Shown: positions 1-61,241, counted from the first letter of the stretch. The stretch: 64,000 bases of DNA from Blastocladiella emersonii ATCC 22665 (GCA_025594325.1 JANHCV010000008.1:992001-1056000); one strand, 5' to 3'. A program made the numbers and translations. The notes: generated by a model from the letters alone, not told the origin.

Positions 1-609
1 ATGCTGGGCGAGGAACTCGATCTTGTCCAGGAGCCTCGTCGCATTGACGCATGCCAGTTCAAGCGGATCTTCGTGGAGCGGGTACACGCCAAAATCAGCT
101 ATGCGCCCAACTCGATCCGATACCTCGTCTACAACAAGCGCACGTCGCTCGAGAATCTGGCCGCCGCGATCTCGGAGTGCGCAGGCGAGCGCGACATGCA
201 GGCAGCACGAAAGAGGCTAGCCGGGTGCGGGTTCTGCTTGAGAGTCCCGTACCTCCTCCTAAAGTGCACGAAGCACCCTCTCGAAGCATGCATGCAGCTG
301 GACAAAGTGAGCCTCCACTCACGCGTCATCCTTGACGCGCTCGACGAGACTAGGATCGCTCTTCCTCGCGCGGCGCTTGGCGCGGTGCAATCGGCCAGCT
401 GGGCCCAAGATTTGACTGTTCACTTACTCGAGCAGTTCCGTGACGCGGCGCTTCCCAAGAATATGGCTGCCCGCGACGTGATGGCTGTCAGGCATTCTCG
501 CGAGTTGCTTCGCGCCCTGACCTCAGCTGAACTCTTGCCAGCGAGGAAAGGGGTCGTGATGTATAACCTGCGGATTCGCGTAGAATCGATATGGCGTCCA
601 CGAGTGTAG
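1..609 (+). CDS. Family A (subtype A4) Gag-like protein, 3' part; 5' end lies outside the window
   Basis: LDLVQEP..ID..QFKRIF aligns with VDLDQEPGFLDSRQIKLVF of 36694. Has knuckle CGFC-x12-H-x4-C and a C-terminal IW. AATAAA near 685. The Gag label is inference. Confidence 0.7.
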   Translation: MLGEELDLVQEPRRIDACQFKRIFVERVHAKISYAPNSIRYLVYNKRTSLENLAAAISECAGERDMQAARKRLAGCGFCLRVPYLLLKCTKHPLEACMQLDKVSLHSRVILDALDETRIALPRAALGAVQSASWAQDLTVHLLEQFRDAALPKNMAARDVMAVRHSRELLRALTSAELLPARKGVVMYNLRIRVESIWRPRV

Positions 610-920
610 CGGTTTGTGGCCGTTTCTTCTCCGCCGCATGAGTTTCCTGAACAAGTTCGTGAGCGTTCCTCATTCAGATATCGAATAAAAACCTAACGCC
701 GTAAAGAATGACCTGGCGCGTCAGTTACAGCGGTGAGACCAGCGCGGTGGTCATGTCCACGTGCTGCATGTGATGCGGGTGGGCCTTGCCAGGGGTGGCC
801 TTGTGCCAGGGGTTTGGCTTCCCACGGACACGGCCGGCCCCGAGGCGCCCAACTCGGCCGCCCTCGCTCTCCATCTCCTCGCGCTATCACAGATGAACTG
901 CCCATGTAACTCGATGCAAG

Positions 921-2585
921 ATGGAACTTGATGCATCTAAATGCGATCTTTATGCTTCCGCGGACTCGCTCGTTAAGTCCGCCCTGGACGAAGGTCGGTT
1001 GCCCGACGACCGCAGCTTGGTCGAGCTCCGTTCCTCAACCTTGCTCAAGGCTATGAACTTGCGAATTGAGTTGATCCGCGCCGCCCTTGCGTCACGCTGC
1101 CCGCTATCCACTGGGGAGTCGGTGTCTGACCTGCAAGCCCGTGCACAAACCGCTGCCGCGTTGCTTCGCGAGATCGAAGCGCTCGGTGTCTCGATCGACG
1201 CACGGCTCTCGGCAACGAAATGTGATTCGAGCCGGCGACCAGAACCAGCGCCGCGTGCCGGCCGCTCCGCTACTACTGCGCAGTGCATTCCCAGCCCGCG
1301 AACGTCCCCTGAGCGACGCGCACCCGTCTCTTCTCCCACTTGCGACCTCGAAGCCCGCGATGAACGCGACGCGTTGTATTTTCGCTACCGCAGCACCGAC
1401 ATTCCAGAATCGCGGATCTGCTGGAACGCCGAACTTTTTGTTAAACGCCTGCGCGCCGTGGCGCCCGACGCGCCGCTTGCCGCGTTGCTGTTCGCGTCGC
1501 GGTCCCGCTTGCCGCCTGACTTGTACACGGTCCTCCTTGCGCTGTTGCGCCCTAGCATGCCCGACACCGAGGCCGAGCACGCGTTCCTCCGTGCCTCGCT
1601 ACCCGACTGGAACTGCCGGTGGGTCCGCGAGTGGCTCACTCTTGGGCCACGGTCGCGCAACGGGATCAGCGCGTTCCAGGCCGACTTCCGCTTCTGGCTC
1701 CGCCGGGTGACGCAGATCGTACCCGCGGTCGAGCGCGAGTTCCACCTCAAGATGCTGTTTATGCGGCGAATTGAGGAACGGCTCGCGTGGACCGCCGAGT
1801 CGGTGCGCCGCATCGTCGACGACGAGAGCGGCTCGATCGTCGATATTGTCGTAGAGTACAACCGGCTTCTGCGTGTGGAGCGGGGCGAGGAGACCGAGCC
1901 ACGTCCCCTCGGCTTGCGCGCACCGCCTGTTCCTCCAGCCCCGCAACCTCGGGCTTCGCCACCTTCACCACGACCGCGCCCACGTTCGAGTTCAAGATCG
2001 AGCGCATCCTCCCGTTCCCGTACGCGTTCCCGTTCGCGCGCGCGAACTCGCTCGCTCTCGAGCCCAAGTTTGAGCCCACGCTCTCGTACTCGCTCTTGGT
2101 CACGCTCACGTTCTCGTACACGCGCTCGGTCACGCTTACGACCGCGTTCTCGATCCCCACTTGGATCCCTCGAGCCCCGGACCTGCGTGCTGTGCATGGA
2201 CCCGGACGTACACCTCCCGCCGCGCAGCAGCAGCTACCCCCGCTCGCTCCGCGGGCACCGCGCCGACCACGCCACCGAGACCTGCCCGCTGCTCAGCTCT
2301 CCGGAGGATCTCGCGCGGCCGTTCGTTGTGGCGGCACGCACTTTTCATCTCGGCGATCCCGTGGCCCCACCGCCGCGCGCGGACGCGGCGCTGCTGGACC
2401 AGGCGACGGAGGAGTGGATGCATAAGTTCCGCAGGGCGAAGATCCCGCGCGGCACGATGCCCGAGATCGCGCAGGAGCTCAAGTGGTGCCGTGTCATGAC
2501 CAAGGTGTTGCTCGCACTGCCGCAAGCGAGGCGGGTGCAGGTGCTGCGCAGTTTGTGGGCCGAGGTCGCGAGGCGGGTTGAGTGA
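921..2585 (+). CDS. Family A (A1) Gag-like protein, 554 aa, Arg/Ser tract after the core
   Basis: Intact ORF: LLKAMNLRIELIRAAL module, core (WVREWLTLGPRSRNGISAFQADF), RS tract, CVLC-x22-H-x4-C, ending LRSLWAEV. Confidence 0.8.
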   Translation: MELDASKCDLYASADSLVKSALDEGRLPDDRSLVELRSSTLLKAMNLRIELIRAALASRCPLSTGESVSDLQARAQTAAALLREIEALGVSIDARLSATKCDSSRRPEPAPRAGRSATTAQCIPSPRTSPERRAPVSSPTCDLEARDERDALYFRYRSTDIPESRICWNAELFVKRLRAVAPDAPLAALLFASRSRLPPDLYTVLLALLRPSMPDTEAEHAFLRASLPDWNCRWVREWLTLGPRSRNGISAFQADFRFWLRRVTQIVPAVEREFHLKMLFMRRIEERLAWTAESVRRIVDDESGSIVDIVVEYNRLLRVERGEETEPRPLGLRAPPVPPAPQPRASPPSPRPRPRSSSRSSASSRSRTRSRSRARTRSLSSPSLSPRSRTRSWSRSRSRTRARSRLRPRSRSPLGSLEPRTCVLCMDPDVHLPPRSSSYPRSLRGHRADHATETCPLLSSPEDLARPFVVAARTFHLGDPVAPPPRADAALLDQATEEWMHKFRRAKIPRGTMPEIAQELKWCRVMTKVLLALPQARRVQVLRSLWAEVARRVE

Positions 2586-3052: not shown

Positions 3053-4072
3053 ATGAGCGATCAGTGCATTCACGAGCCCCTGCGCAGGTACAAAAGGCTC
3101 GCCTTCCGCAACACGACATCGCTGCCCTCTCTCGAGATCACCGACGAAACGACGCATCGACCCCGTCCCCGACTTCTAGCACTGCCAACCTCGCGGCGCA
3201 GCAACATGCATACTCCGAACTCGAACCGCGCGAGCGAGACGCCCAGCCCCGCCTCGGGCTGCAATCGCCGAACCAACGAGAACAATGCTATGCGCCCGAC
3301 TGGCGCTGGTTCGTGCAGCACCAGCTCGCCGTCTGGTCAGTCCCGCCGCCTCGGCCGCATTGCACCCTACCCGCCCGTCCCACAGCGCTACGCTCATACT
3401 TGGCCGAGCACGGTCTATGTGATGCCCTTGTCGCCGTTCCGTATGGCGGCTGGCCTCGGCACGCGGCCGTCCTCCGCCGACCGCGCCCTTGACGCGGGGT
3501 TCCGGGCCGCTGGTCTCGGTGGACTCTCGCCGATTCGCGAGCGGGACCACGCCAAGCTGTTCCAAGTTCCCGGCCTCGGCTTCCGTGCTCACTCTGCCAA
3601 CCACAGCCGCACCTATCTGCACCATGGTGCACGTCTCGATCCTCAGCTGACTTTTATCGAGCTCGGCCGCACCGAACGACCGCATCGCATCGTCCCGGGC
3701 GCGCGCCCGCCACCGCTCGTCGAACAACGCAACGCTGGGCCGACGCAGCAGGGTGCCACCACACGCGCGCGTCCGCCGTCGGCCACCGCCAATGGCCGGG
3801 CAATCTGCAGAGGGTGTCAATTGGGCTGCTCGAGTAGGACGAGTTCAAGCACGAGCACGCTGGCGCGCTCAGCACGATCGCGCGCGGCGCAGGGTGCCCA
3901 TAGTGGGATCTGTTCGCTACTCGTTCCGACAATGAGAAGGTGGAACTTCTGCACTGCCGCGCGAAAAAAGCCGAACCGGTGTGGTTCCTCGACCCCGCGT
4001 GCGAGACGGGGCAGCGGCGGACGCGTCGTCCACGTCCGCGTGACGTCCGCGGCTGGTGGCCCACCGGGCTGA
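3053..4072 (+). CDS. Hypothetical low-complexity (S/P/R-rich) protein
   Basis: Long open frame (ATG at 3053) with no recognisable motif and no paralog in the window. Could be a GC-rich chance ORF. Confidence 0.25.
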   Translation: MSDQCIHEPLRRYKRLAFRNTTSLPSLEITDETTHRPRPRLLALPTSRRSNMHTPNSNRASETPSPASGCNRRTNENNAMRPTGAGSCSTSSPSGQSRRLGRIAPYPPVPQRYAHTWPSTVYVMPLSPFRMAAGLGTRPSSADRALDAGFRAAGLGGLSPIRERDHAKLFQVPGLGFRAHSANHSRTYLHHGARLDPQLTFIELGRTERPHRIVPGARPPPLVEQRNAGPTQQGATTRARPPSATANGRAICRGCQLGCSSRTSSSTSTLARSARSRAAQGAHSGICSLLVPTMRRWNFCTAARKKPNRCGSSTPRARRGSGGRVVHVRVTSAAGGPPG

Positions 4073-4145
4073 TCAGCTCGCGGGACAGCAAGCTCTCTTG
4101 ATCGTACCCTCTGCAACGCCTGAATCACATGTAACTCGATGCAAC

Positions 4146-5723
4146 ATGCTCTCAGCTACATTTATGTGTGATTCCGACGTTTCCGCGGGCACGGGCGCCA
4201 AAGTGAAGGGTCGGCCACCCGCTGACCGCGACGAGCTCGTCAAGCTCCGCACCGCGAACCTGCTCGAGACTATGAACTTGCGCACAAAAATGATCCGCAT
4301 CGCTCTCACGAACCGCCGTTTGCCAAGCGCTGAACGGTCCACGGCGGACCCGCAGGCGGGTGCTGAAGCTGTGGCCCGCAGGTTGCGCGAGCTCGAAGAG
4401 CAAGGCTTCCTTATCGACTTGCGGCTTGCAGCAATCGATGGGCAGCCTTGTCGAGCTGCTGAGCACCCGAACGCAGTTCCCGAGGTCGACGACCCGCGTG
4501 GCGGGCGCGACGACGGCGTGCTCCCGCCCGCGGCCGAGGCGCCTACAATTGACGCAGCTGAAGCCTTCTATCTGACGCCGAGTTCGGTCGAGCTACGCGC
4601 CTGCCGTAGCGATAACCCTCTGGAGTCATTGGCCCGATCGGCTGCACCGCGAACCACGGCTGCACCTTGCGAATCGCCCACGCTGCCGCCAAATTGTACC
4701 GCCGGAGTCGAACCGATCGTGCAACGACCGCTGCAGCACACAAACGAAGGGAAACCCGGGATTTTGCCGCGTGCGAGCTGGGACCTCGCGCATGCGCGGC
4801 ACTTCATCGCGCGCTATGCAACTCTGGCGATGCCGCTGCAAGAACCGCCTCAAGTGACGACGGTACCCGACGACCCGAATTCGCTTCTCTGTCCATGCCC
4901 GCCAGCGGGTCCCATGTCTGAAGGAGAACTCGCCGCGGTTGTTTCGGAGCACGGTCCCGTCTACCGCGCGCCCAGTGCGGTATCTATGCGCACGCCCGCC
5001 GCCATGACCTTGTCGCGCGCCTTTCTGGCCCAGCTCTCAAAACTCGTCCCGAGGGGCTCGCTCGCACGCGCGTTGCTCGTGTCGCGCGGGAAAGTAGATT
5101 GTAACACTTACATCGTGTACGCCGTGTTTCTCAACCCGCGCTCAACGGGCGACACGGCCGCCGCCCGCCACTTCCTCAACGCGACTGACGCCCGCTGGCA
5201 GCCCGCGTGGGTCGCCCGGTGGCGATCGCTTCGCGCACGGCCTGGTGTGCCTGTCGCCGCTTTCTACGAACAGTTCGCGAGCGCGCTCGACGACGCAGGC
5301 GTCAGTTTCGCGGCCGCGGGTCAGCTTGCCCACATCAAGGCGCTGTTCCTCGACATGGTGAGCGTGCTCCCGCACCATGTGCTTGCGCGGATCGCGGGCA
5401 TGGTCGACGATGCGGGCAAGTCGCTTGAAGATTACGTGGCGGCGATCGGCGAGGTCAAGTTCCCGGCCGTCGCGCGAGCTCTTGCTCCGCCCGTGACTTC
5501 TCCAGTGGTTGAGCCGCCATCGATTGCCCCGCGCGCCTCGCTGAGCAGTGTGCGGACCAACACCTCAACGAATTCAGCGCTGCCGCGTCGCCCGGTAAAG
5601 CCCACAGCTAACAGCGATGCGCTCAAGGGGCTCGCGGGCCCTGCTCGCCGCCCGACTGTGGGCGACGCGATGTGGAAGATGGGTCAATGGCAGCGAGCGG
5701 CCGCGCTCGAGCGGCTGCAGTAG
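4146..5723 (+). CDS. Family A (A1-like) protein lacking the zinc knuckle and tail domain
   Basis: LLETMNLRTKMIRIAL module and core (WVARWRSLRARPGVPVAAFYEQF...HIKALF) are present. No CxxC..H..C. Preceded by CATGTAACTCGATGCAAC-ATG. Confidence 0.7.
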   Translation: MLSATFMCDSDVSAGTGAKVKGRPPADRDELVKLRTANLLETMNLRTKMIRIALTNRRLPSAERSTADPQAGAEAVARRLRELEEQGFLIDLRLAAIDGQPCRAAEHPNAVPEVDDPRGGRDDGVLPPAAEAPTIDAAEAFYLTPSSVELRACRSDNPLESLARSAAPRTTAAPCESPTLPPNCTAGVEPIVQRPLQHTNEGKPGILPRASWDLAHARHFIARYATLAMPLQEPPQVTTVPDDPNSLLCPCPPAGPMSEGELAAVVSEHGPVYRAPSAVSMRTPAAMTLSRAFLAQLSKLVPRGSLARALLVSRGKVDCNTYIVYAVFLNPRSTGDTAAARHFLNATDARWQPAWVARWRSLRARPGVPVAAFYEQFASALDDAGVSFAAAGQLAHIKALFLDMVSVLPHHVLARIAGMVDDAGKSLEDYVAAIGEVKFPAVARALAPPVTSPVVEPPSIAPRASLSSVRTNTSTNSALPRRPVKPTANSDALKGLAGPARRPTVGDAMWKMGQWQRAAALERLQ

Positions 5724-5805: not shown

Positions 5806-7257
5806 TTACGTCGCCCGTATCTCGCACATTCTCGCAATCTGGCTCCTCACGGTGATCAGCCGCGACTCGAGCCTCGATGCTGGGAACTCGGCCAGCCCAC
5901 GCAGGTTCAGCGCGCCGCGGCGGATCTTGGCCCGGTCTTGTTCGAGCGAGAACGAGAACTTGGCCCGCTCCAGCTTGTCCGCCCACTTGAGAGAAAGCGC
6001 GGCGAGATCGGCATACCACGTGCTGCGCATGACGGTGAACGAAGGGAACTTGCCAATCATGCGGAGTGCGAGCTCGATAGAACCAGCGATTTGGTCAACT
6101 TTCGAACCCGGCTGGCAGTTCAGGATCGAGTGGTTTCTGGCTTCCTGACGCAGCATGGGAAAGTGCTTGCAGTAGGTGCACGGCCGCAGGGCAGCGCGCT
6201 CCTCCTTGGGATCGCGTGGAGCGGGCAATAGGGCGGGCAGTGGGGTAGCGAGTGGGCGACACGTTGAAGAGTCGCGAAGTTGCAGCGGCGAAGGCTGTGC
6301 GAGCACATTGCTTCCCGCGGGAGCGGCGGGGATTTTGAAGTTGCCGAGCTCTTCAGCGATGTCTGCGATGGTAGCGTAGCTGCTCTTGACGAGTCGTTCC
6401 ATCCTTGGATCTCTCGCCTCGGGCAAGTTGCTAAGCTTCTCGAGAAACAGGACTTTGATGTTCGGCGAGCTTGCGAGTATCCTGAAGTTGCCCCAATCGC
6501 GGAACACCCCCCACACGCGTTGATGAAAAGTTGACACGAGCGTGCCGGGCGGCGGCACCATTTCAACCCAGCGCCGAACCCAAGTGGGCCGAGAGGGTGG
6601 GTCGGTAGCGTCAAGAAAGTTGACTCGCGCGTCTAAATCGTTCTGAGTTGCAAGGATGAGCACCGAAACGGCAAGGTAGTCGTCGTGCGGCATGTTATCC
6701 ATTGACGCGATCAGTGCGCGGGCAAGGCTACCCGGCGGCACGAGTTCGCAAAGACAGTCGATACAGTCTTGCGGGTCAACGGTGGACCACCGCCCGGGCG
6801 GAGCGGGGAGCCGAAGCAGCGGACCACGCTCGCGGATGAGAGATTCCAGGGGCCGGCCGCGGTCTTCGGCGCGTAGCGTGGGCTGTGTGGTCGTCGGTTC
6901 TTGCGTTGGAGTTGGTGTAAAAGAGACAGGAGCTGGTTTTGGGGGCAGTGAAGTCGATCGAATGACCAAGTAGCGCTCGAGCGCGTTGCAGTGGAGCTCG
7001 AGCTGGCTGAGCGCGGAAGCCAAATCGGCTGGCGACGACGCCGTCGCATTACCAAGTCGATGGTCGAGCAAAGATCGCAAGTGAGTAACCCGCGCTTCCA
7101 CTAGGCGGTGCAAGGACTCCTCGAGCAAGCGGCGGCGGCGGCTTTGATCGTCAACAAGAAGCAGCGGCACCTCACCGGGTTCGTTCGACGCGATGGGGTC
7201 GCAAGCGGCATCACAGATAGTAGATTGAGCTCTTTTAAGGACGTTGCATGAAGTCAT
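5806..7257 (-). CDS. Family A Gag-like protein, 483 aa
   Basis: MTSCN start, core (WVRRWVEMVPPPGTLVSTFHQRV..NIKVLF), CTYC-x12-H-x4-C. Confidence 0.8.
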   Translation of the reverse strand: MTSCNVLKRAQSTICDAACDPIASNEPGEVPLLLVDDQSRRRRLLEESLHRLVEARVTHLRSLLDHRLGNATASSPADLASALSQLELHCNALERYLVIRSTSLPPKPAPVSFTPTPTQEPTTTQPTLRAEDRGRPLESLIRERGPLLRLPAPPGRWSTVDPQDCIDCLCELVPPGSLARALIASMDNMPHDDYLAVSVLILATQNDLDARVNFLDATDPPSRPTWVRRWVEMVPPPGTLVSTFHQRVWGVFRDWGNFRILASSPNIKVLFLEKLSNLPEARDPRMERLVKSSYATIADIAEELGNFKIPAAPAGSNVLAQPSPLQLRDSSTCRPLATPLPALLPAPRDPKEERAALRPCTYCKHFPMLRQEARNHSILNCQPGSKVDQIAGSIELALRMIGKFPSFTVMRSTWYADLAALSLKWADKLERAKFSFSLEQDRAKIRRGALNLRGLAEFPASRLESRLITVRSQIARMCEIRAT

Positions 7258-7707: not shown

Positions 7708-9165
7708 ATGAATACTCCATGCAACTTCAATGAGAAACCGTTCCCATCACACGGTGACTCTTCCCGCGCTGCGGAACAACCTCTTGCAGAGCCGTCCAAG
7801 CGGAGCAGTGGGAGCGAGTCGGAAACAATCTTGCGTGTTATGGAGTTGCGCATCGAAATTATACGGACCGCGCTTTCGATGGGTCTTGAAAGCTTCTCTA
7901 CCCCGTGGCAAGCGGATGCCGCCGCCGCCAAACTCGCCAAGCTCAAGGCGCAGCTCGCGAGCTTGACTGAGCCTAAGCTGCGTTTCAGTCCGGCTCGAGC
8001 CGAAGCAGGCCCCGCGTCGACCCAAACTAAAACCGACTCTGCTTGCGCCAGTCCAGCGCATAGTCGACGCGAGGTCGAGGTGGGTCGTCCGCACAGCTTG
8101 CCGTTTTCCATGCCGCCCGCAGCTTACCCAGTCGAGGCTATGGAGCCCTCCATTGACAACCCCGCTCGCTACTTCTACAACGACCACCTTCGCTTAAACC
8201 TCAAGGACTTTGGCCCACGGTTCCGTACAATGCCCAACGACGTCGAACAAGCGCTTCGTGCTGGCCGAGTGTTCCTTGATGAGCTCGGTCGCTTCGCGCC
8301 CGAAATCCCCCTTGCCGTGCTGCTGGTGCATTCATACCCAAACGTTCATCGCGCGGTTTATCGCACCTACGCCGTCTCCTTGAGCATGACCGCGTCCGAC
8401 GACGAGGCCAGACATCTCTTCCTTGACGCCCTCAGGCCGCAGGACGATCGGTCATCGTGGATCAACTGCTGGGCCCGCTTGAAGCCCCGACCGAGCACCA
8501 CTGTTGCAAAGTTCTACACGGATTTCGTAGACCTGCTCAGCGAAAAGATCCCGATCGACGCAGCCTTTCAGAGATCGTGGCACATGAAGAAACTGTTCGC
8601 GGACAAGCTGTTCATGTCGCTCGGGTACAACCCGCGGTCGTCGCGCAATCCGCGGTCATCGCTGGACATGATTGCTGATCCCGAATTCACCCTGTCTGAG
8701 ATGGCCGCCGCCCTCGGTGACATTGTGTTTCCCGCGGTTCTCTCGACCACGCCCGCACCACTGCATAGCGGCGACGCGTCGATCCGCAGCGGCGCTGGTA
8801 TCTGCATGTACTGCCGCTTACTTTGTCTAGCCCTCGATGTCATCCGCTCGCATACCACTCGCGACTGCCGCGCACTGCATGACACTCGTTCCGTCGCGAC
8901 GGCCATCGTGAGCGCAGCGCGAAGCATGGGAGTCCCAAGACCACCGCTTCGTGTGCCCGCTCCGCACGACCACGCCGCAATCACGACCGCGCGGCAGTGG
9001 ATCGAAGGTGTGACCCGCACGGGGATCCCAAAGGGCACGTCGCAGCGGAAGGCCGTTGAAATCAAGTCTGGGCGCATGGTCGCGCAGGCGATGATGATGC
9101 TTCCCATGATCGATTTTGACCGAGTCTTTCTCGGCATCTGGGCCGAGATTGTGGCGATGTGGTAG
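7708..9165 (+). CDS. Family A (A2-like) Gag-like protein, 485 aa
   Basis: MNTPCN start, VMELRIEIIRTAL, core (LKPRPSTTVAKFYTDFVDLL..FADKLFMSLGYNP), CMYC-x12-H-x4-C, ending IWAEI. Confidence 0.8.
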   Translation: MNTPCNFNEKPFPSHGDSSRAAEQPLAEPSKRSSGSESETILRVMELRIEIIRTALSMGLESFSTPWQADAAAAKLAKLKAQLASLTEPKLRFSPARAEAGPASTQTKTDSACASPAHSRREVEVGRPHSLPFSMPPAAYPVEAMEPSIDNPARYFYNDHLRLNLKDFGPRFRTMPNDVEQALRAGRVFLDELGRFAPEIPLAVLLVHSYPNVHRAVYRTYAVSLSMTASDDEARHLFLDALRPQDDRSSWINCWARLKPRPSTTVAKFYTDFVDLLSEKIPIDAAFQRSWHMKKLFADKLFMSLGYNPRSSRNPRSSLDMIADPEFTLSEMAAALGDIVFPAVLSTTPAPLHSGDASIRSGAGICMYCRLLCLALDVIRSHTTRDCRALHDTRSVATAIVSAARSMGVPRPPLRVPAPHDHAAITTARQWIEGVTRTGIPKGTSQRKAVEIKSGRMVAQAMMMLPMIDFDRVFLGIWAEIVAMW

Positions 9166-9327
9166 CTCAATACAATGTAGATTTTTGATGGTTCTAGTTT
9201 TCTGCTGATTTGAACAAATCCGCTCACAAAGTCGTGCCCACGTGAGTCGCGCAACAACGACGCGTTCAGCGACGCGTTCCCAAGAACCGTCACCGCTTCC
9301 TCAGACTCGAAATATCCACCCACTGCC

Positions 9328-11085
9328 ATGGATTCGCCGTCTTCTACTATATGCAATGAACTTCTTGCTCTATCGCAGCCGGATCGCAATGCAGATTTGA
9401 CGCCGGCCGTCGCTGCACTCGATCGCGTCACGGTTACTACGAGGCTTGAAGACGCGTCGAGCTACGACTTGGCTGTTCTCGAGCAAGGAGCGGTTTGTAA
9501 TCTCCTGTCGCGCCGACTTGGACTGCTCCGAGCCGCCTTATGTCCGCGCGTTGCACCGAGCAAGCCTTTTTCAGCGGAGGAGATATTCAGCGCGTCGCTT
9601 ACACTATTCCGTGCTCAATCGGTGTACAACGCGATCAAACAGCCATCTACCCTCGAAGCTCCTATCAAGGTCTCTCCCGTTGTCGCGACTGTCCAGCTTG
9701 CCGCCAATTTCGACCATTTACCGTCAGAGCTCCAACATGCGGAAGTCGCGCTTAGCGCCGAGCCTCCCGAAACGGTTGTCTCCGCGCCCGAGCCTGTTGA
9801 GTCTGAACCCGACTCCTTTACTGCCGAGCTCGAATTGATTTCATCCGCGCCAGGTTCGCCAGGTTCGAGGGTTGATGTTGTCATTCCCGAGGCCGAATCA
9901 GTGGCTCTTCCTTCGGTGTACGAGTCTCGTTCTCCTTCTCCCCTTGCAGTCGCCAAGCCAAACTCAAGCGTATTATCCTCGAGCCCAGCTCACGCGTCTG
10001 AACCGGCACACGTTGGGCCAACGACACTGCTCGCAGCGTGCTTGACACTTACAGCTCACATCAACAACATCTTTTGCTCCGTGGACTCAGCCAAGTTTGA
10101 CTACACCAAGGCTGCTTCTGCCGCCGAGTCGTTGCTTGAAATTCTCGCAAACGGGGTCGAGCCAGGTCATCTCGCCCGAGCTCTGATTGACTCGCACGAC
10201 CGCCTCCCGTCTCAAGTGTACCGCACCTACGCAATCGCTTTGTCGCCCGAAATGTCCGATGGCGCTGCGCGTGCCGCTGTTCGCTCTGTCTTTTCTCATC
10301 CTTGCCGGGACTGTGTTGCGCGCTGGATCAGGTTTTACATCAAGACTAGACCGAAAAACCAGATGAAAATGCGTCTACTCCTCGTCAGCGCCGATAAGAT
10401 CTTGATCGGATCTGCATCACGTTTTGTGGACCGTTCGAGACTTTCACACGTCAAGGGACTCTTCATTGACACGCTTGCGTGGATTGATCGTGCTTCGCTC
10501 TCCTCGCAGATTGATGATCCAAATGTCAAGGTCGCAGACATCTTGACCATCGCTTCCCAGCACTGCGCGTCGTCGACCAAGTCGCGCGCAGTTGAACAGC
10601 ACAGCTCATCCCGCCCGGCGAGCTTGTTAAACGCTCCCGCGCAACAGCGGCCATCCGCGATCGCTTATAACTCAGCTACTCGTCTCACTTATGACACTCC
10701 AACGTTTCAGCGACAGGCCGTCGGCTGCAGCTACTGCATGTCCGCCTTCGACTGCCACCAAATCGCTCCGCACACCGAGACCAACTGTCCCCGCCTCTTT
10801 GACGCCCCGGAGATCGGCGCCCAAGTAAGCAGAGCCATCGCTGCAATGTTCTACCCGGTCGCAATCATTCTTCCACAGTACGGCCACGAAGACTACGCAC
10901 TTGACGCGCTGAAGACGCGAATGAGCCACGACTTCGCGGGTCGGCGGGTGTGCGCTGACCATCGGCGTGCGCTTACAGCGCTCAACGCGCTCTTCCGCAT
11001 CCCGCAGTTCGAAACACGGCGTGATCGGATCCAACGGATTCTTGCGTGGACTCAGTTCATGCAGTCGGGCCGGCCGGCAGTTTGA
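9328..11085 (+). CDS. Family A (A5) Gag-like protein, 585 aa
   Basis: STICN motif and EQGAVCNLLSRRLGLLRAAL module shared with 31791, 38831 and 59383. Core present, CSYC-x11-H-x4-C. Confidence 0.8.
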   Translation: MDSPSSTICNELLALSQPDRNADLTPAVAALDRVTVTTRLEDASSYDLAVLEQGAVCNLLSRRLGLLRAALCPRVAPSKPFSAEEIFSASLTLFRAQSVYNAIKQPSTLEAPIKVSPVVATVQLAANFDHLPSELQHAEVALSAEPPETVVSAPEPVESEPDSFTAELELISSAPGSPGSRVDVVIPEAESVALPSVYESRSPSPLAVAKPNSSVLSSSPAHASEPAHVGPTTLLAACLTLTAHINNIFCSVDSAKFDYTKAASAAESLLEILANGVEPGHLARALIDSHDRLPSQVYRTYAIALSPEMSDGAARAAVRSVFSHPCRDCVARWIRFYIKTRPKNQMKMRLLLVSADKILIGSASRFVDRSRLSHVKGLFIDTLAWIDRASLSSQIDDPNVKVADILTIASQHCASSTKSRAVEQHSSSRPASLLNAPAQQRPSAIAYNSATRLTYDTPTFQRQAVGCSYCMSAFDCHQIAPHTETNCPRLFDAPEIGAQVSRAIAAMFYPVAIILPQYGHEDYALDALKTRMSHDFAGRRVCADHRRALTALNALFRIPQFETRRDRIQRILAWTQFMQSGRPAV

Positions 11086-18992: not shown

Positions 18993-19169
18993 AGGCAGGA
19001 ATACATGACTCTTGAACACACGACCACACTAGACTTTACGGTGGTAGACCGACTTTGCGGGACGCACGCGTCGCTCATACTCACGTGGAGGGGTGGAGAC
19101 AAATTTGAAAAACCGATCGCGCGGAGAGAACGGGTCCGCCCACTCTCGCCAGGCAAACTATGCAATCCA

Positions 19170-47983: not shown

Positions 47984-49874
47984 GCTCAAAGCCCTTGAGC
48001 CTGAATAAGACGGGTAACGCAAATAGTTGACCTCTAGCAATACACCGAATCGCCGAACATTGTCAATTTGCCTCGCATGGTTGGTTGGAGATCAGAGAGG
48101 CCCAAGCCGACCTTGATCAGGAATCCACGTCACAACTTGTTAGCCTTGTATTCAGCGCCAGCAGAACTGTAATAAATATTCGGCTCTCGGGCCCAGGCGT
48201 ACCTGGCAACGCAGCTGCGCGGCTGCCGCTGCACGTCGATTTCGCAAAGCGATCAACTTTTGTTGGCGACCCTTGCAATCGCCCAATGATCATCAAGCCC
48301 AAACCCATCGGGAGTGCCTGTGAGCACCTTCCACGGTCAGCTGTTGGAGGTTTCAGAGGATTTAGGTATACGGGTAGCGGCAACCGCCAGCCGACTCGCC
48401 CGTATCTACCAAATGGCCCTCAGATGGTTGGAGCTGTTCCGCGACGCATACTCGTTTATACCTTCGTGTAACCAAGACTAAATAAACCGGGTACCGTTGT
48501 ATGCGAGCCACTACCCGATTGCAGCTCCCCCGAACGTCCGATTGATGCGCCGCGCAAACGCGAGACAGTCACGCCTGAATCACGTGCAAGGCTTGAGACA
48601 CTTTTTTACGTTTCGGGGTGGCTGAGCGGGGGCGAGTTTGCCTTCTCGCGCTCACTCCACACTCCAAAGAACGAAGCCCATGAATGATACAGACTTCTTA
48701 ACTCAGTGCACTTGCATTTTTGATGTCGTAGGACCATGTCCAGCCCATCCGGGGGGCGTCAAAGCGGGAACTTTATCAGCGACTCGAATGCGCGAACAGC
48801 GGGCACTGTTGCATGTCATGAACTGCCGCTTGCAGGTTATAAGCCAGGCTCTGCGTTCTCGCCTCTCTCCCTCGGAGTCAAATCAACCCGAGCTCGCCGC
48901 CACCCTTGCGCGCGCTCTACTCGCCGCGGAACATGCCCTTGAAACGGCTCGCGCCGACGCTCCTGCTCCTCACGGCACACTGGAGGCCGATACATCACCG
49001 CTACCAGCATTAGAGCCTGCTTTGTCTCTGGCGACACCGCGTGCGACGCCGCGTGCAAAGCCCGATACCAGGCCCCGCGATCCGCCACCCTGCTCGACCC
49101 CATCAGCCCCGCCCGTCGACCTAGTCGCCACTGTTGATGCCGCCAACTTTCAGTTTACTGCTGTCAACCCGCTCGCCGAAAAGGCTGGTGGTCAAGTGGA
49201 GCGTATGCTTGCTGCGCTCACAGATGCTGGCGTCCCGCCTGGACAGCTTGCGGAAGCCCTTCTTTTGACCCGCGCGCGTGTCCCGCGCAACATCTACCGC
49301 TCGTTTGCCATCACCTTGCGCCCAAACATGCCCGACTCGGATGCGCGCGATGTGGTACGCGCCGTTTTCCGCCCGCAACGACCCGCTTGGTTTTCACGGT
49401 GGCTCGAGTTTCGCGCAAGCAGTCGAATGGGCCTTGACGACATACTTCACGATGCGCGCCTCATACTTCGTGACGCAAACGGCTGGCACCCACCGATTGG
49501 ACGGCTCGCGCACATCAAGCAGCTTTTAGCGGAGCGATTCGACGGCGTGGATCTCCTTGACGTTCGCAAGAATATCGACGACCCGGAGCAGTCGTTTGAA
49601 GACGTCCTGAAGATGTGCTTCCGCCTCGCCAAATGGGGCCGAGTACGTCGCGACGAGGACTTTTCTTCACTAAGGGCCCGTTTGGTTCCGGGGTGAATCA
49701 GGTGGATCAATCGATTTTACACGGTCCGGTGTTCACCCAGCTGAAACGTGGGATTTTCACCCCGTCGCGTTCATCGCGGCGTTTGGTTCAACCCCCGGGT
49801 GAGCTGAATGGAACCCTCGTCGCTGAATCGCCCGTCTGCTCGCCCCCGAAACCTTCAGGCTGTGCTCCCCGGCC

Positions 49875-52703: not shown

Positions 52704-54102
52704 GTTGTTTGAGGGCTCGAGAACACGATGCGTGAGGTTAGGTGTTGATTCGTTGCAATAAGTGCGGCTGCAAAGAGGTGGGAAAGATTTTATTGCGGGG
52801 GGGGGGCGTTCATCCAGCGGGGCGTTTGGTTCGCACGGCCGCTGAGATGAACGGGGGTGAGGTGAAACGTGGCAACTTTTTCAGCTGATCCACCTGATCT
52901 GAACCAAACGGGCCCTAAGCTCGGGCGTGATCGGGTCAAAGCGGCGCCGACAAGACTCGCCAGCGCCACTGTCTCGCGCCGCCGCTACTTCTGCTTCCGC
53001 TTCCGTGGTCGCCGAAACCTCCGCTTCCAGCTGCGTCGCCTTGCAGCGCAAGTCACCGCTCCCGGGCCTCACCTGTGTGTACTGCATCGCTTTCATGACG
53101 TTCAATCAACCCAAGTCGAGACGAACGCGTCCACACAGCGAAGCAGAGTGTAGTCGAGTGACCAACGCACATAACCTCGCCATCGTCATCTACAAGGCGC
53201 TTGACTCGCTTCCTGCGCACACACAAATCAAGCTTTCCATGCCTTCACGCAGCGAACCCGCCTCGGCGATCATGACTTCGCTACGTCAGCTCGAGCGCGA
53301 TCTCGCGCGCGAAAGCAAGGCAACCGCGCAGTGGCTCGGTCACGCCGCTGTGGTGGCCTTGGCGCGGCTTCCACCCGATGGTCGAGTGCGCTCGGTCCAG
53401 CGCACATTGCTCGTTCTGGAAGGCATGCTGAAAGCGCCCACGAATGCTACTTGGGAAGAGGTGGTCGAGAACGGAATGAGAGCGATACGCTAAAGCTAAA
53501 TATACGTGAGCTGAGGTTGTTCCGGATTATTTGGTTGTAGTGAGTTGTTTTGATCAAATCGACTCAGCGCATGCCTAAATCGAGCGCCCATGACGTGGCT
53601 AAGGTCAAGAACTACACGGCGACCTTGGCGATGCAGATGCTTTGGCGCAAGGAAGTGGGCACTGCGCTCTAGTCGACTCTGTGTATGCTTCTCGCCCAAT
53701 CCGATCTCAAGGTGTACAGATTCACACTGTGCTCACCGTGTCTAACACAGCCCTCGTTCATGGGCCAGTCTGATTCATGTTACAGGGCCACGAGCGCAAC
53801 AGCTACAAGGACCTGTTCAAAGTCCGCCTCACCGCGTTCCGCTCGACCACACGCAACCCGCTGCGAGACGATCCCTCTAACGAGTAGCGCTAAACACTTG
53901 GCATCTCAACGCACTCGACTATACAGCATCTGTCAGATAAAATCCCGCCGCTCGCTAACGTTCTTGATACCGATATTGCTCGAAACAAAGGCGGCCGCGC
54001 TCTGTGCCAGGGCGAAGCTGTCAACGGTCGACGCGTCCCTGAAGCCCGGCTGACTGATCAAGCTGGTGGCCAGCCCCAATCGCAACCTGCGCCGCACAAT
54101 GT

Positions 54103-54139: not shown

Positions 54140-54222
54140 CTGAATGCCGCGGCGAGACCCAAAGGCGCGCCGCTGCTCCGCAGTGACCTTCCCCCCAGTG
54201 TGCCAGGAATCTATGAAACGCC

Positions 54223-55692
54223 ATGAACACTCGATGCAATAGTCTTTTTGACGCTCATGTACCAACGTGGAAACCTGAAATCGACCGTGAGCGACAAATC
54301 CTCCTTGCGACTATGCACCAGCAGGCGATGTCCTTGCGCTTATCTCATATCCAGCTCGCCCTTGCCGCTCGCCGCGGCTCCAACCCACCCGGTCAAGACA
54401 CCGCTTCCGAACAGTCGGCTTCCTTGACAACGGAGCTTCGGAACTTGGAACAATCGCGCGAGGCCCTCGAAAGTCGTTGCAACCCAACTGCGGTTTCTCA
54501 TGCAGGATCTCGGCTTCCACTCACAGATCTCTCTGTCCTTGCAAATGAGCCGTCTTGGGGTCCGCCAAGCCGGGCTGTCCCCTCGCAACGCGAGCCGCAG
54601 CTTCCGCCAGAGGAAGATATTTCTCGACCAAGCTTGACTGCCGCTCTTCCAACTCCATTCGCTTCGCCGCAATAACGGACTCAGACTAGGGCACCAGCTT
54701 CGCAAAATCGCGGGTGCGCTTATGATTACCAGTTGTATGAAGTCCTTTGCCACCGTGGCCCGAAACTCAAGCTTGCAACGACAATGGATCACGATACGGC
54801 AGTTCACACCACCTCCATGTTTCTGGACGATTTGCGAAAGCTTTTCCCACAATACCCCTTGGCGAGCGTGCTCCTGACGGCGACAAGGTTCATGCCTCGC
54901 CCGGCCTACCACGTTCTTGCAGTTTTCCTACACGCCGACGCTTCGGACTTTGCTGGCCAGCAGCTTTTGCTTGACGTCCTTGCCCCCTAATGGAATCGCG
55001 ACTGGGTGCTTCGGTGGCTCGCAAGTAGTCCACAGGCGAAAAAATCCGTGTGGCGATTTTATGATGACTTGTGCGCGCTGCTTCGCGAAGCTGTCAATCC
55101 GGACGAAGAGCCTGGATTTCAGGACTGCCGACGAGTGAAGCTGGTTTTTGCACAAAAGCTGTACCCTGGGCAAGGAAACACGGCTGGACCGGCCATGGGC
55201 ATTGTATCCAATCCGCAAGCGACGCTTATGGATCTTGCGCCAGCTTACTACTCTCAGCTGAATAGCAGTCCAGCCGCCCCGCCCAAGCGATTCCCTTGGT
55301 GCTCATTCTGCACTCAGCTTCCTTTCATACACGCCGCGGGCACCATGCATCCGCTCGCCGCGTGCTGGAATCTGCGCGAGTATGGCGAGCATGCACGAAT
55401 CGTTGTCAAGGCCCTCGGTCATGCTGCCTTCGCGGTCCCGGATCTGCGTTCGAGCGGACCATTCCGGGATTGGCAAGCCGTGCAAATGACCAGAACAATC
55501 CTCAAGCAGCTTCGCGAAGTGCCGATTCCGACGGGTTCTCCTAGCCTGGTTCGCAAAGCTAACGCCGACGCGTGTGGACTGCTGAGCGCCCTTCTCTCGC
55601 TGCCACACGGGAACGCGCAGCACGCGATGAAGACCTTGTGGGCTCAAGCAGCTGGTTATGTGCAACCAGTAGCGTTAGGGCACGTAGTATGA
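54223..55692 (+). pseudogene. Family A (A4) gene with two in-frame TAA stops
   Basis: ORFs 54223, 54733 and 55006 are in one frame, separated only by TAA 54673 and TAA 54988. Colinear with 36694. Confidence 0.85.
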
Positions 55693-58208: not shown

Positions 58209-59160
58209 TTATTGATTCTCGATCTCGTCGCGCATCTCATCCCACAACACTCGAACCGCACGCACTCGAACATCCGCGGGAAGCTGTCGCAACGCTTGTA
58301 GAACATGAAGCGCCCGCTTGATATCGTAGGCATCGCCAAATGCGGTCCCAGGGCTTTGAGCGACAGGGGTGAGACGTTAGATCCACTAGGCCACCTCGCG
58401 ATTGGCATCAGCTTCAGCCTTCAGCTCAGATGCATGGACCAGGTCAGTGAGCAAGTCGATTCCATGCTTTCGCGCGGTGGTGACAAACAGCTGCACATGA
58501 GCAATTGGCTGACGCAGGAGCGGGCAGGACTCGGGCGAGTGTTTCCTGAGCAGCGTGAGAGCCTTTCCGGGAAGCGCTCGATTGCAGTAGTCGCAAGGGC
58601 TCAATCCAAGCGACGTGTGTGACACGGACCCCGAAAATGAGCAATCGGTCGCTCGATTCGGCGATTGCGACCAAGCGCGCGAGCACGAGGGGGAGCTTGA
58701 GGGCAAACGAGAGTACAGCGAGCTCCGCGGTGAGTTATGGACGCTGGATGGTGTCAGTGACCTCCGCCACGCGCGCGATGGCGAGCGACCGCGCGGTTTT
58801 CTGTCGTATAGATTGCGAGAGGGAGAAGGCGAAGGTCTTGGCGGCAGGGCAAGGGCAAGTAGGTGCGATAGCGGTGAGCGAGCCGTAGGCATTGCGTCCG
58901 TCCCCTTGACTGAAGCGGCTCGATGCCTGTGTCCAGAGTTGCCCCACTTCTTGCTCAGCTGGACATACGTTTGCGCAACATTGGAAAGCGAAGCGTTGGG
59001 ATCGCACACGAGCTGCCTGATCGGGCGCGGGCTCCACTCGAAGCTGCGGTAGACGCGAATATTGTAAGCGCGCTTGACGTGCTCCTCGGACAAAATAGCG
59101 GGGTCAGCTCAACCCGTTCGGAAAGCAGCGGGATGCCGCGAAGATCTCAACTTTGGCGGG
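58209..59160 (-). pseudogene. Family A (A1-like) 5'-truncated copy
   Basis: End of core, CDYC-x14-H-x4-C, then in-frame TAG 58386 and TAA 58377, continuing to LRQLPADVRVRAVRVLWDEM. Confidence 0.7.
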
Positions 59161-59382
59161 CGGCGGCGGCAGGCCGGGGCTCGCGGTGGACAAGTTGCAT
59201 GGAGTTGTGAAGTCTTGAACGACAGAGGGAGGTAAGTGCAAGATGGAGCGAGAGCGAGAAGCAAAAGTCGAGTCTCGCCGCCGCCACGCCTCCCGTCATG
59301 TGGTGTGGCGCATCGAGCACTTTTGCTGCAGCCGTCCGCCCGGCCCTCGCTCTCCAACCACTTGCAGCCCATGTAATGCACA

Positions 59383-61241
59383 ATGAATGAACCTCCAACG
59401 ACTTGCTGCAATCAAGTTTATGGGCCCGAAAGTCCAGCCTCCACCGCTTCCGCGGCCGATTTTCAGGAGGCGGTCGCAACGTTCCACCGCTTCGAATCCA
59501 CCGGAGAGCTGCCTCGGAACGAAGTCTCTGCAGCAGAGCAAGGCGCCCTTTGTAACCTCATGAACATGCGCTTGAATCTCATCCATGCTGGGTTGCAGCT
59601 CCGCAACGGACACGGTCCGCCCTTCAGCCCTGCCCCACTCAGTAGAGCGGCTATTGCGGTCGGTAACGCGGAAGCGAACCTTGCCAAATTTACTGCGCTT
59701 CGTACTCGAACCCCGGAACCATCCCAAACTACAACTGCGGGAAGCCCGGCGCATCCTTTGTCCGTTCTTGCGCATTCTCCGTCTGTGGAATGCTCGCCCG
59801 TTGTTCTGCTGAAGCAGGGTATCGACTTGGACCAGCTTGGCAACTCAATCGACGTTGACGAAGACCAAGGTTCTTACATTGCCGCTCCCACTGCGGACGA
59901 GTCTCATCCCAGTGACACCATGGCCGTTCCCGATTGCGACGACACAGCAGCCTTGACTGTTGCTGCACCCGAAATTCGCTCATACGTGCCGCAACACGTC
60001 ATTCCGCCGAGCGTATTGACCCATATGGGACTCGTTGCTGGCGATCCGGACCTCGCTGCTGCCGTTCGCAGTATCCAGTTTCCTGCACACGTCTTGGATC
60101 CGTTCTTGCCCGATGCATCGCGTGCGATCGCCAATTTGCTGGACGCACTTTTGCAAACGAATCTACCGCACGGCAAACTCGCCTCAGCCTTGCTACTCCT
60201 GCACGACCGCCTACCTTACGCAATCTACCGGGCCTATGCCATAGCTCTCACACCCGACATGTCCGATGCGCTTGCAAAGGACACGATCACTGCAGTGTTC
60301 TGCGATCCCCCCCTGGGATGGCTCAAAACATGGAACAGGCTTCGCTTTGGGGCAAGGACTGCTAGCTTAAAGAAAGTTGTTGCCCAGTCTCGTAATCTTG
60401 TTCTTGCGGCGGGCCGCGGGAATCACGTCCACCTAACTTTGCCGCACATCAGAGGCCTTGTCCTCGAGCGGTTTGACTGGATTGATTGGCCTGCACTAGC
60501 CCTGCTTGTCGCTGATCGTACTTGCTCCTTCACTGTTATGCTAAGCCGCGCATTTGACATGCTTCCATCACGCACGGTGGACCTTCCTCCGTGTCCGCCA
60601 GGTCAAAACGCGATCCTTCCGTCTCCTACAGATTCTCCGGCTCGCTCATCTTCCCCTACTTTGCCCTCATTGGCTCCGATGGACGCCTTAATTGAACAGC
60701 CAGTTGCCAAAGGCATACACGACTCTTGCACGGCTTCCGTTCCACTTCGCTCGCCTGTAGCAGCTCGAACGCGTCGAACTCCTTAAACGATGACTGCGTC
60801 TATTGCAAGGCTCTCAGGACTACGCCACCAGTTAAATTAACTTACTTCCTTGCGCCGCCTCACACAGAGGACAAGTGTGAACCTCTTTGCAACGTGCAGG
60901 AAGTCTCAAAGCGCGTTGCGGCCGTGATGTCTGGAAGCTTGCCAGTCGAACTTCCGCCCAAGAACGAGACAAGCGACGCGCTCGTGACGCGTGTCATTGC
61001 CGTGATCGCCCAAATCAAGTCTTTGCAGGTGGATTCGGTCATCTTAGCCAAAGCTTCCCTATGCGCGCTCACACGGATCAAGGATCGCGAGGTGCGTGAC
61101 AAACGGATCCGCAAGTTTCTCGTTTGGCTTCATTGCACGCAGCGGTGGAATCTTGGGTATAAGCAGATCGATGTGAGCAAGGCGGTCACCATGATTCTTA
61201 CCAAGCAACCCAAGAAGCAAGCCCAAACTGTGCCTGCGTAG
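59383..61241 (+). pseudogene. Family A (A5) gene with one frameshift near 60750
   Basis: TTCCN, EQGALCNLMNMRLNLI and core in ORF 59383; CVYC-x18-H-x4-C and tail in ORF 60726. The frameshift may be a sequencing error. Confidence 0.75.

What the first reader, a model, noticed from the sequence alone, without database searches (positions are those of the whole stretch)
1..61241. Dense array of ~24 intronless Gag/capsid-like genes with no pol or LTRs
Seen: one family recurs throughout the window in at least five diverged subtypes. Members share an N-module, a ~150-aa core, a zinc knuckle and a helical tail. At least seven copies are intact ORFs despite heavy divergence. They are intronless and less GC3-biased than neighbouring spliced genes. 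Known: the retroviral/Ty3 capsid major homology region looks like [23 protein letters not shown] (HIV-1); compare LVPTPGESVTAHYAKFCALLAEV (16899), LSPRPGEPVWRLYDAFRALLSEA (36694) and FLPEPHETAASYFGKFRALLAEA (13878). Capsid followed by a CCHC knuckle is Gag order. Inference: a domesticated, tandemly expanded Gag family evolving by birth and death, analogous to animal Arc/PNMA/Fv1. Possible roles are RNA-carrying capsids or restriction of retroelements or viruses. I know of no such array described in early-diverging fungi.
Basis: partly seen in the sequence, partly recalled or inferred. Interest (0 to 1): 0.85.

Follow-up and report, generated by a model that had tools for sequence, protein, structure and literature searches.

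The report
Tandem orphan gene array, possibly capsid-like
A water mould-like fungus, Blastocladiella emersonii, carries a large and mostly unannotated tandem array of fast-diverging intronless genes found in no other organism searched; they are real, selected genes with their own shared promoter motif, but their likeness to retrovirus capsid (Gag) proteins is only a weak hint.

Summary
The window is Blastocladiella emersonii ATCC 22665, contig JANHCV010000008.1, about 992,001-1,056,000. It holds about 22 loci of one family covering 46% of the bases. Seven are intact ORFs with all three modules. There is no pol and there are no LTRs.

What the tools added:
- The array runs far beyond the window: about 57 core-bearing loci in 249 kb sampled, between 0.19 and 1.30 Mb of the contig.
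- In 1.84 billion protein representatives, the only relatives are B. emersonii hypothetical proteins.
- The core folds with high confidence (pLDDT 96) into an 11-helix domain.
- The closest copies show dN/dS of 0.25-0.36.
- GC3 is 0.55-0.73, against 0.83-0.93 in housekeeping genes.
- The copies share an upstream element: ACGCGT, then CAYGTG, about 90-125 nt before the start codon.

The Gag reading is only hinted at. Retroviral capsids rank first in both Foldseek libraries, but with E of 0.2 or worse and TM of 0.32 or less. Pfam Retrotrans_gag and PNMA hits stay below threshold and look like noise. The zinc motif is C-x2-C-x12-H-x4-C, never the retroviral knuckle.

Verdict: a new species-restricted tandem gene family. 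A capsid origin is plausible (about 45%) but unproven.

The parts
1..609 (+). 3' part (end of core, zinc motif, tail) of a copy cut by the window start; the rest lies upstream in L001
897..2582 (+). Three-module ORF (ATG 921). It has an Arg/Ser-rich tandem-repeat insert between core and tail. It lacks the conserved N-terminal start motif. The public model P0002 covers only 1557-2585, spliced.
4056..5720 (+). Open ORF with N-module and core; the tail is short and has no CCHC motif
5809..7257 (-). Intact three-module gene
7708..9162 (+). Intact three-module gene. Its core plus tail (8158-9162) was modelled: pLDDT 84.8.
9328..11082 (+). Intact three-module gene, only 166 nt downstream of the previous one
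13878..15740 (+). Intact three-module gene with a 202-aa Arg/Ser-rich linker built from tandem repeats
16899..18989 (+). Intact three-module gene with a 270-aa Arg/Ser-rich linker. Its core (17937-18500) was modelled: pLDDT 96, pTM 0.90.
18993..20733 (+). Broken copy (core and divergent tail): at least 1 frame change
29299..29439 (+). N-module fragment
29953..31791 (-). Open 613-aa ORF. It has a family N-module (hhalign probability 99.5%) and the shared upstream element. Its C-terminal 450 aa are unrelated to core or tail. GC3 is 0.80.
32422..34432 (-). Broken copy with all three modules: at least 2 frame changes
35575..36339 (-). Fragment related to the divergent tail type of 19684-20733 and 52903-53490
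36694..38190 (+). Intact three-module gene
38147..38515 (+). Short core fragment
38837..39670 (+). ORF with the N-module and upstream element but no core or tail
42193..42819 (+). ORF with the N-module and upstream element but no core or tail
45393..45971 (+). Core-only fragment at the inner edge of the left Harbinger repeat arm
48626..49693 (+). ORF with a partial N-module and a core but no tail. It is 70% identical to the core of 19640-20089.
52903..53490 (+). Tail-only fragment (divergent tail type)
54217..55689 (+). Broken copy with all three modules: at least 2 in-frame stop interruptions
58233..59108 (-). Fragment: end of core plus tail remnants
59383..61142 (+). Copy with N-module and core in one ORF (59383-60783). 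The tail lies outside that ORF: at least 1 interruption.
16788..16825 (+). Example of the shared upstream element (ACGCGT, then CAYGTG, then TGTGGCGC), 70-105 nt before the ATG of 16899
36573..36600 (+). The same upstream element before the gene at 36694
31870..31910 (-). The same upstream element before the N-module-only gene 29953-31791
9239..9277 (+). Upstream element before 9328, with the order reversed: CACGTG, then two ACGCGT

Best explanation
SHOWN. The window is a slice of a much larger, species-restricted array of independent, intronless genes in a lower-GC, gene-poor, transposon-bearing stretch of one B. emersonii contig.

Each unit has these parts, in order:
- an upstream element about 125 to 80 nt before the ATG (ACGCGT, about 10 nt, CAYGTG, often TGTGGCGC);
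- a start that usually reads M-x-T-x-C-N;
- an ~80-aa helical N-module;
- a variable disordered Ser/Pro/Arg-rich linker, expanded to Arg/Ser repeats in three copies;
- a 188-aa, 11-helix core;
- a CCHC zinc site that opens a four-helix tail.

The proteins are basic (pI 9-11 in six of the seven intact copies; 6.8 in the seventh). The copies diverge to 17-46% identity. Yet the closest pairs keep dN/dS at 0.25-0.36, and intact genes sit among fragments and broken copies. That is evolution by local duplication, divergence and loss, not by transposition.

INFERRED, about 45%. The core descends from a retroelement capsid (CA-like, two-lobed, all-helical) that lost pol and LTRs long ago. The proteins act as self-associating, nucleic-acid-binding proteins. 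They are switched on together through the MCB-like/E-box-like promoter element.
For: Family and architecture.

Source and extent.

Only 25 hits in 1.84e9 representatives. Twenty-four are B. emersonii proteins, none is longer than 575 aa and none carries pol.

Purifying selection: omega is 0.25-0.36 at dS 0.7-1.0, and pN<pS in 401 of 406 pairs.

Shared promoter element: CAYGTG lies at -88 to -110 in 11 of 18 copies (binomial 2e-14). ACGCGT lies at -101 to -125 in 7 of 18 (1e-7).

Capsid hint:
- In BFVD, ranks 1, 3, 4, 5, 7 and 9 are deltaretroviral or epsilonretroviral Gag; the best probability is 0.75.
- In the PDB search with the core-only model of a different paralogue, BLV capsid is rank 1 and about 16 of the top 50 are BLV, RSV, HIV or MLV capsid, aligned over nearly the whole core.
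- Two distant members hit the same segment (43-79 of 97) of Pfam Retrotrans_gag with the same conserved motif of the core.
Against: - No capsid match is significant: Foldseek E is 0.2 or worse, TM is 0.22-0.32 and rmsd is 12-19 A.
- Pfam hits are below threshold: 13.5-15.7 bits for Retrotrans_gag and 14.2 for PNMA on genomic translations, against cut-offs of 24-25. The 22.4-bit PNMA hit rests on a chimeric public gene model.
- His_Phos_1, which cannot be homologous, hits the same motif in six members.
- Profile searches against PDB sequences find no capsid, Arc or PNMA.
- The zinc motif is not a retroviral knuckle.
- The N-module and the four-helix tail have no Gag counterpart.
- No relative linked to RT or integrase was found.
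- Expression was not tested.
- The same compartment holds at least one other orphan tandem family. Orphan arrays arise there without any need for a viral origin.
Confidence: 0.45

Rival explanations
1. An orphan family unrelated to Gag. On this reading it is a lineage-specific, all-helical, zinc-binding, basic protein family. It could be chromatin-, DNA- or RNA-binding regulators, or members of an arms-race family. It arose in, or diverged beyond recognition within, blastoclad fungi. It expanded by tandem duplication in a fast-evolving genome compartment. The likeness to capsids is the generic likeness of small helical bundles.
For: - No significant sequence or structure match to anything.
- The zinc motif has the classical C-x2-C-x12-H-x4-C spacing. 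Its only weak PDB profile hits are a C2H2 finger protein (SNAI1, E 0.035) and Nanos.
- pTM 0.90 indicates one compact domain rather than two flexibly linked lobes.
- The N-module and promoter cassette is also joined to unrelated C-terminal parts.
- A second orphan tandem family lies in the same compartment.
Against: Retroviral capsids are repeatedly the top-ranked structures, in two libraries and with two paralogue models. A generic helical bundle would not be expected to do this. The Retrotrans_gag hits from two distant members fall on the same profile segment.
Confidence: 0.38
2. A gene of an unrecognised mobile or viral element. Candidates are a multigene family of an endogenised large DNA virus or a novel transposon. 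On this reading the selection acts for the element, not the host.
For: - Lower GC3 than host genes.
- The compartment carries Harbinger transposases, PIF1-type helicase fragments, a Herpes_ori_bp-type helicase gene and one weak integrase-core hit.
- Large DNA viruses are known to carry tandem multigene families (my own knowledge, not tested).
Against: - Copies cluster on one contig over more than 1 Mb, interleaved with ordinary genes such as chitin synthase and P450.
- Two diverged copies lie on another contig among housekeeping genes.
- There are no near-identical dispersed copies and no terminal repeats around the units.
- No viral hallmark domains were seen in any ORF scanned.
- No hit in the viral structure library is significant.
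Confidence: 0.12
3. Decaying repeats without function: long open frames kept only by GC-rich composition and recent duplication.
For: About half of the loci in the window are fragments or broken copies. Most copies are absent from the public annotation.
Against: - Seven 480-700-codon ORFs stay open although their sequences are only 17-46% identical.
- pN<pS in 401 of 406 pairs, and omega is 0.25-0.36.
- AlphaFold confidence of 96 from family covariation alone.
- A conserved upstream element at a fixed distance.
Confidence: 0.04

Closest known systems
Co-opted LTR-retrotransposon gag gene families of animals (PNMA, RTL/SIRH, Arc) and the fungal Crtg12-14 genes (PMC8321522)
   Same: - Gag-only genes without pol or LTRs.
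- No introns.
- Under purifying selection.
- Some are tandemly duplicated.
- The best, though weak, sequence and structure hits of this family point to this group.
   Different: - Membership is not shown: every Pfam hit is below threshold.
- The three fungal cases are single-copy and in Dikarya (PMC8321522). Here there are dozens of copies in a blastoclad.
- This family has an extra N-module and a four-helix tail.
- The zinc motif does not have knuckle spacing.
Orthoretroviral capsid protein (CA; deltaretrovirus-type structures top the Foldseek lists)
   Same: - An all-helical domain of about 190 aa with 11 helices.
- The Foldseek alignment is co-linear over 180-230 columns.
- A conserved loop-helix motif sits about two thirds of the way along, followed by three to four short helices.
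   Different: - TM is only 0.22-0.32 and E is 0.4 or worse.
- The model is one compact domain (pTM 0.90).
- There is no neighbouring MA, protease or pol.
SCAN-domain zinc-finger proteins of vertebrates (a capsid C-terminal domain fused to C2H2 fingers, as summarised in PMC8321522)
   Same: A helical, possibly capsid-derived domain followed by a zinc site with classical finger spacing; large, fast-evolving, clustered gene families.
   Different: SCAN is about 80 aa and is followed by many C2H2 fingers. Here there is one CCHC site embedded in a helical domain. No sequence match was found.
Lineage-specific tandem multigene families in fast-evolving genome compartments of fungi and oomycetes (my own knowledge)
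   Same: - A gene-poor, transposon-bearing, lower-GC compartment.
- Birth-and-death dynamics.
- No homologues outside the species.
- A second orphan family lies alongside.
   Different: No signal peptide or effector-like features were looked for. The proteins are basic, zinc-binding and share a fixed promoter element.

Membership tests
Retrotransposon/retroviral Gag (Pfam Retrotrans_gag PF03732, PNMA PF14893) | Sequence match to a Gag/capsid profile at or above the curated threshold | tested here: not met
   54 family sequences were scanned. The best scores on genomic translations are 15.7 bits for Retrotrans_gag (cut-off 24.1) and 14.2 bits for PNMA (cut-off 25). The 22.4-bit PNMA score comes only from a chimeric public model.
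Retrotransposon/retroviral Gag | Two-lobed all-helical capsid fold with a significant structural match | tested here: inconclusive
   Capsids rank first in BFVD and PDB. The best values are E 0.22, probability 0.75 and TM 0.32.
Retrotransposon/retroviral Gag | Nucleocapsid knuckle C-x2-C-x4-H-x4-C after the capsid domain | tested here: not met
   0 of 32 tails, and no ORF piece of the window in any frame, has this spacing. The motif is C-x2-C-x(10-24, mode 12)-H-x4-C.
Retrotransposon/retroviral Gag | Present or traceable linkage to protease, RT or integrase, and to LTRs | tested here: not met
   - No such domain in 64 window ORFs.
- No LTR-like repeats.
- No pol-bearing relative among 1.84e9 proteins.
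- One weak, unlocated rve hit among 50 ORFs of the flanking loci.
Retrotransposon/retroviral Gag | Self-assembly and nucleic-acid packaging | not testable with these tools
   Only indirect evidence: basic pI (9-11 in six of the seven intact copies, 6.8 in the seventh) and Arg/Ser-rich linkers.
Co-opted (domesticated) gag genes | Immobile, and kept under purifying selection | tested here: met
   Copies are confined to one contig region, plus one small cluster elsewhere. Omega is 0.25-0.36.
Co-opted (domesticated) gag genes | Phylogenetic nesting within retrotransposon gag genes | not tested
   No retrotransposon gag alignable with the family could be obtained with the tools.
Co-opted (domesticated) gag genes | Expression | not testable with these tools
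   ESTs exist for the species (PMC9730499), but they cannot be searched here.
Classical (C2H2/FOG-type CCHC) zinc finger | C-x2-4-C-x12-H-x3-5-H/C spacing | tested here: met
   18 of 32 tails have exactly x12 and x4.
Classical (C2H2/FOG-type CCHC) zinc finger | Profile match to zinc-finger families | tested here: inconclusive
   No Pfam zinc-finger hit. The PDB profile search gives SNAI1 at E 0.035 and Nanos at E 1.9.
Active transposable element | Dispersed near-identical copies with terminal repeats | tested here: not met
   The highest core identity among sampled copies is 72%. Copies lie head to tail on one contig, with no repeats flanking the units.

The most novel reading that the evidence does not exclude
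A megabase-scale chromosome compartment of an early-diverging fungus is filled with dozens to hundreds of co-regulated genes for a strongly diverged capsid-type protein. That would be the largest expansion of a Gag-derived host gene family known outside animals. It may be tied to handling of nucleic acids during the zoospore/sporangium cycle. The link to the life cycle is pure speculation.
Probability: 0.2. Interest if true: 0.85.

Novelty: new variant of a known kind. Interest (0 to 1): 0.6.

Why it matters
If the capsid origin is confirmed, this would be the first multi-copy case of gag co-option in fungi. It would show that capsid-derived host gene families arose well outside animals and plants.

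Even if the capsid origin fails, several points stand:
- The array is a large, nearly unannotated part of the genome of an optogenetics and phototaxis model fungus.
- It has a confidently predicted fold that matches no solved structure.
- It has a shared promoter element that offers a direct handle on its regulation.
- The public gene models in this region are truncated or chimeric and need correction.

Tried and rejected
- Word-based protein searches, with one member and with a 37-sequence core alignment at E up to 10, returned nothing.
- Exact look-ups of six window proteins failed, because the public models differ from the ORFs.
- PHROGs returned nothing.
- Profile searches against PDB sequences returned no capsid.
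- tRNA and Rfam scans were empty.
- Four PDB phmmer searches failed to locate the ORF behind the weak rve hit.
- The PNMA hit of P0001 (E 9e-5) looked promising. It fell to E 0.03 on the unspliced genomic piece, so I discounted it.
- The ORFs 12827-13501 and 15807-16499, which sit just upstream of two copies, were tested as possible extra modules. They are unrelated to N, core or tail.
- I rejected the retrotransposon reading (no pol, no LTR, not dispersed).
- I rejected the junk reading (selection, conserved promoter, confident fold).


Full report
OBSERVATION. An all-against-all comparison of stop-to-stop ORFs gives one cluster of 24 ORF pieces. An alignment of ten long members shows three conserved modules separated by variable linkers. 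HMMs of the modules map 16 N-module, 17 core and 15 tail hits. These resolve into about 22 loci between 1 and 61142, covering 46% of the window. Seven ORFs of 483-697 codons carry all three modules in one open frame. Others are open but aberrant, and about half are fragments or broken. Counts of breaks (and for the last copy):
- 18993-20733: at least 1 frame change.
- 32422-34432: at least 2 frame changes.
- 54217-55689: at least 2 in-frame stops.
- 59383-61142: at least 1 interruption.

The corrections concern the size of the core and the nature of the zinc motif.

SOURCE AND EXTENT. A profile search of 1.84 billion protein representatives with the core-plus-tail alignment found only 25 proteins. 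Twenty-four are hypothetical proteins of Blastocladiella emersonii ATCC 22665. Twenty-three of those lie on contig JANHCV010000008.1 and one on JANHCV010000006.1. The 25th is a TPR protein matched through a short repeat.

Locus L001 overlaps the window at 100% identity. This places the window at about 992,001-1,056,000 of the 1.80-Mb contig.

Eight further loci were fetched around annotated members. They show the same modules at 186-207, 334-354, 554-576, 851-872, 948-969, 1153-1177 and 1277-1302 kb of the contig, and in a small cluster on the other contig among ABC-transporter and aminotransferase genes. In all there are about 57 core-bearing loci in 249 kb sampled.

The public annotation misses most copies. 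In the first 12.6 kb of the window, one of six copies is called, and that one is truncated. Other models fuse neighbouring copies: P0001 joins three cores over 3.4 kb. The spliced models I used are the public ones as returned by the tools.

ANATOMY. The ORF usually begins M-x-T-x-C-N and continues with an ~80-aa helical N-module. A linker of 46-270 aa follows, rich in Ser, Pro and Arg. In three copies the linker or another spacer has grown into Arg/Ser repeats by tandem duplication.

The core is about 188 aa. AlphaFold2, given only family sequences, models it at pLDDT 96 and pTM 0.90 as 11 helices.

After a short spacer comes C-x2-C-x(10-24, mode 12)-H-x4-C in 30 of 32 tails. It opens a well-predicted four-helix domain. 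Six of the seven intact proteins are basic (pI 9.0-11.2); the seventh has pI 6.8.

The N-module also heads three ORFs that have no core or tail: 29953-31791-, 38837-39670+ and 42193-42819+.

A SHARED UPSTREAM ELEMENT (new). Aligning the 200 nt before the start codons and counting motifs gives these results:
- CAYGTG lies at -88 to -110 in 11 of 18 copies. The chance per copy is 0.022, and the binomial probability is 2e-14.
- ACGCGT lies at -101 to -125 in 7 of 18 copies (1e-7).
- TGTGGCGC often follows directly.

The position windows were chosen after seeing the data, so the probabilities are optimistic, but the effect is large. The element is kept between copies whose proteins are under 30% identical, and it is also present before the N-module-only ORFs. 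ACGCGT is the MluI cell-cycle box and CACGTG is an E-box in yeasts (my own knowledge). Whether the same factors act here is unknown. The element argues that each unit is its own transcription unit and that the family is co-regulated.

SELECTION AND COMPOSITION. I ran Nei-Gojobori estimates on single-frame core segments of 29 copies. The closest pairs give omega 0.25-0.36 at dS 0.7-1.0, and pN<pS in 401 of 406 pairs. Most pairs are saturated at synonymous sites.

GC3 is 0.55-0.73 in the family, against 0.83-0.93 in ABC-transporter and chitin-synthase ORFs. The compartment has 60-62% GC, against 67.5% at the gene-dense locus on the other contig.

IS IT GAG?

Sequence. None of 54 family sequences reaches a Pfam threshold. 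Two distant members hit Retrotrans_gag at E 0.017-0.033. Both hits fall on profile positions 43-79, and both use the same conserved motif of the core. One member hits PNMA at E 0.03 on the genomic piece. The E of 9e-5 for that family depends on a chimeric public model. The unrelated His_Phos_1 family hits the same motif in six members, so these scores are at noise level. PDB profile searches find no capsid.

Structure. No Foldseek hit is significant. Even so, retroviral Gag/CA entries lead both lists:
- In BFVD they hold ranks 1, 3, 4, 5, 7 and 9, with a best probability of 0.75.
- In the PDB search with the core-only model of another paralogue, rank 1 and about 16 of the top 50 are retroviral capsids.

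TM is only 0.22-0.32.

Zinc motif. It has classical finger spacing, never the retroviral knuckle spacing.

Pol and LTRs. Both are absent from the window. One weak integrase-core hit (E 1.4e-4) occurs among 50 non-family ORFs of the flanking loci.

I rate the capsid origin at about 45%.

MECHANISM. Shown: local duplication, divergence and loss of independent, selected genes that share a promoter element. Inferred: the basic charge, the Arg/Ser linkers, the zinc site and the possibly capsid-like core point to self-associating, nucleic-acid-binding proteins. Nothing here shows what they bind or when.

The rivals are:
- an orphan zinc-binding family with no viral ancestry (0.38);
- a gene family of an unrecognised mobile or viral element (0.12);
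- decaying repeats without function (0.04).

COMPARISON AND NOVELTY. Gag co-option in fungi has been reported as three single-copy events in Dikarya (PMC8321522). The genome paper for this species does not mention transposable elements or this family (PMC9730499). Membership of the Gag families fails the sequence, knuckle and pol-linkage tests and is inconclusive on fold. I therefore do not file it as a member. It works, at most, like one.

- While reading, I also worked out in my reasoning where the start region of one copy is disrupted. I do not repeat it here.
- I fetched no sequence of an animal virus.
- No contig looked human.

Noticed in passing
window 42965-45426 and 49664-52920: Two inverted copies of a PIF/Harbinger-type transposon (DDE_Tnp_4 transposase plus a Myb/SANT-like ORF). 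They are 100% complementary over 1885 nt and 96-98% at the edges. The right arm carries an extra ~800 nt with a 15-nt tandem repeat. The arms enclose 4.2 kb that holds two family fragments. This is either very recent transposition or gene conversion, or an assembly artefact.
   Followed up: partly
window 40787-41164 (-); L007 2995-15136 (-); L009 407-940 (-): A second, unrelated tandem family of intronless genes of about 140-180 aa with no Pfam match lies in the same compartment. There are eight annotated copies, 24-81% identical to one another, and one relative in the window (43% identity).
   Followed up: partly
window 19676-22352 versus 45393-47980: An old segmental duplication (72-79% nucleotide identity). 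It carries a family copy together with two neighbouring ORFs (20992-21591 / 46014-46628 and 21774-22352 / 46724-47980; the last has a weak FNIP-repeat hit). Duplication therefore moves blocks larger than one gene.
   Followed up: no
window 12827-13501 (+) and 15807-16499 (+): Two related ORFs of about 225-231 aa. Each lies directly upstream of one of the two Arg/Ser-rich copies. They are unrelated to the N, core or tail modules. They may be a co-duplicated partner gene or a non-coding remnant.
   Followed up: partly
window 22689-23942 (+); L002 20736-21826; L009 20328-20942: PIF1-type helicase fragments recur in the compartment. They may be remnants of Helitron-like elements.
   Followed up: no
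L003 3927-6917 (+): An annotated 996-aa gene matches the Herpes_ori_bp (origin-binding helicase) family (E 4e-16 on the ORF). It lies next to family copies and a chitin synthase gene. Its origin (host, transposon or viral) is unknown.
   Followed up: no
one of 50 non-family ORFs in L001-L004 and L006 (not located): A weak integrase-core (rve) hit, E 1.4e-4. It could be a remnant of a retroelement or a DNA transposon near the array.
   Followed up: partly
window 26000-32000: A stretch of higher GC (0.66-0.70) with overlapping long ORFs on both strands and no Pfam match. It includes the aberrant N-module gene 29953-31791, whose GC3 is 0.80.
   Followed up: no
window 34470-35309 (+) and 56411-58135 (-): A leucine-rich-repeat ORF and an ankyrin-repeat ORF sit among the family copies. 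Their GC3 (0.57 and 0.67) is as low as the family's.
   Followed up: no
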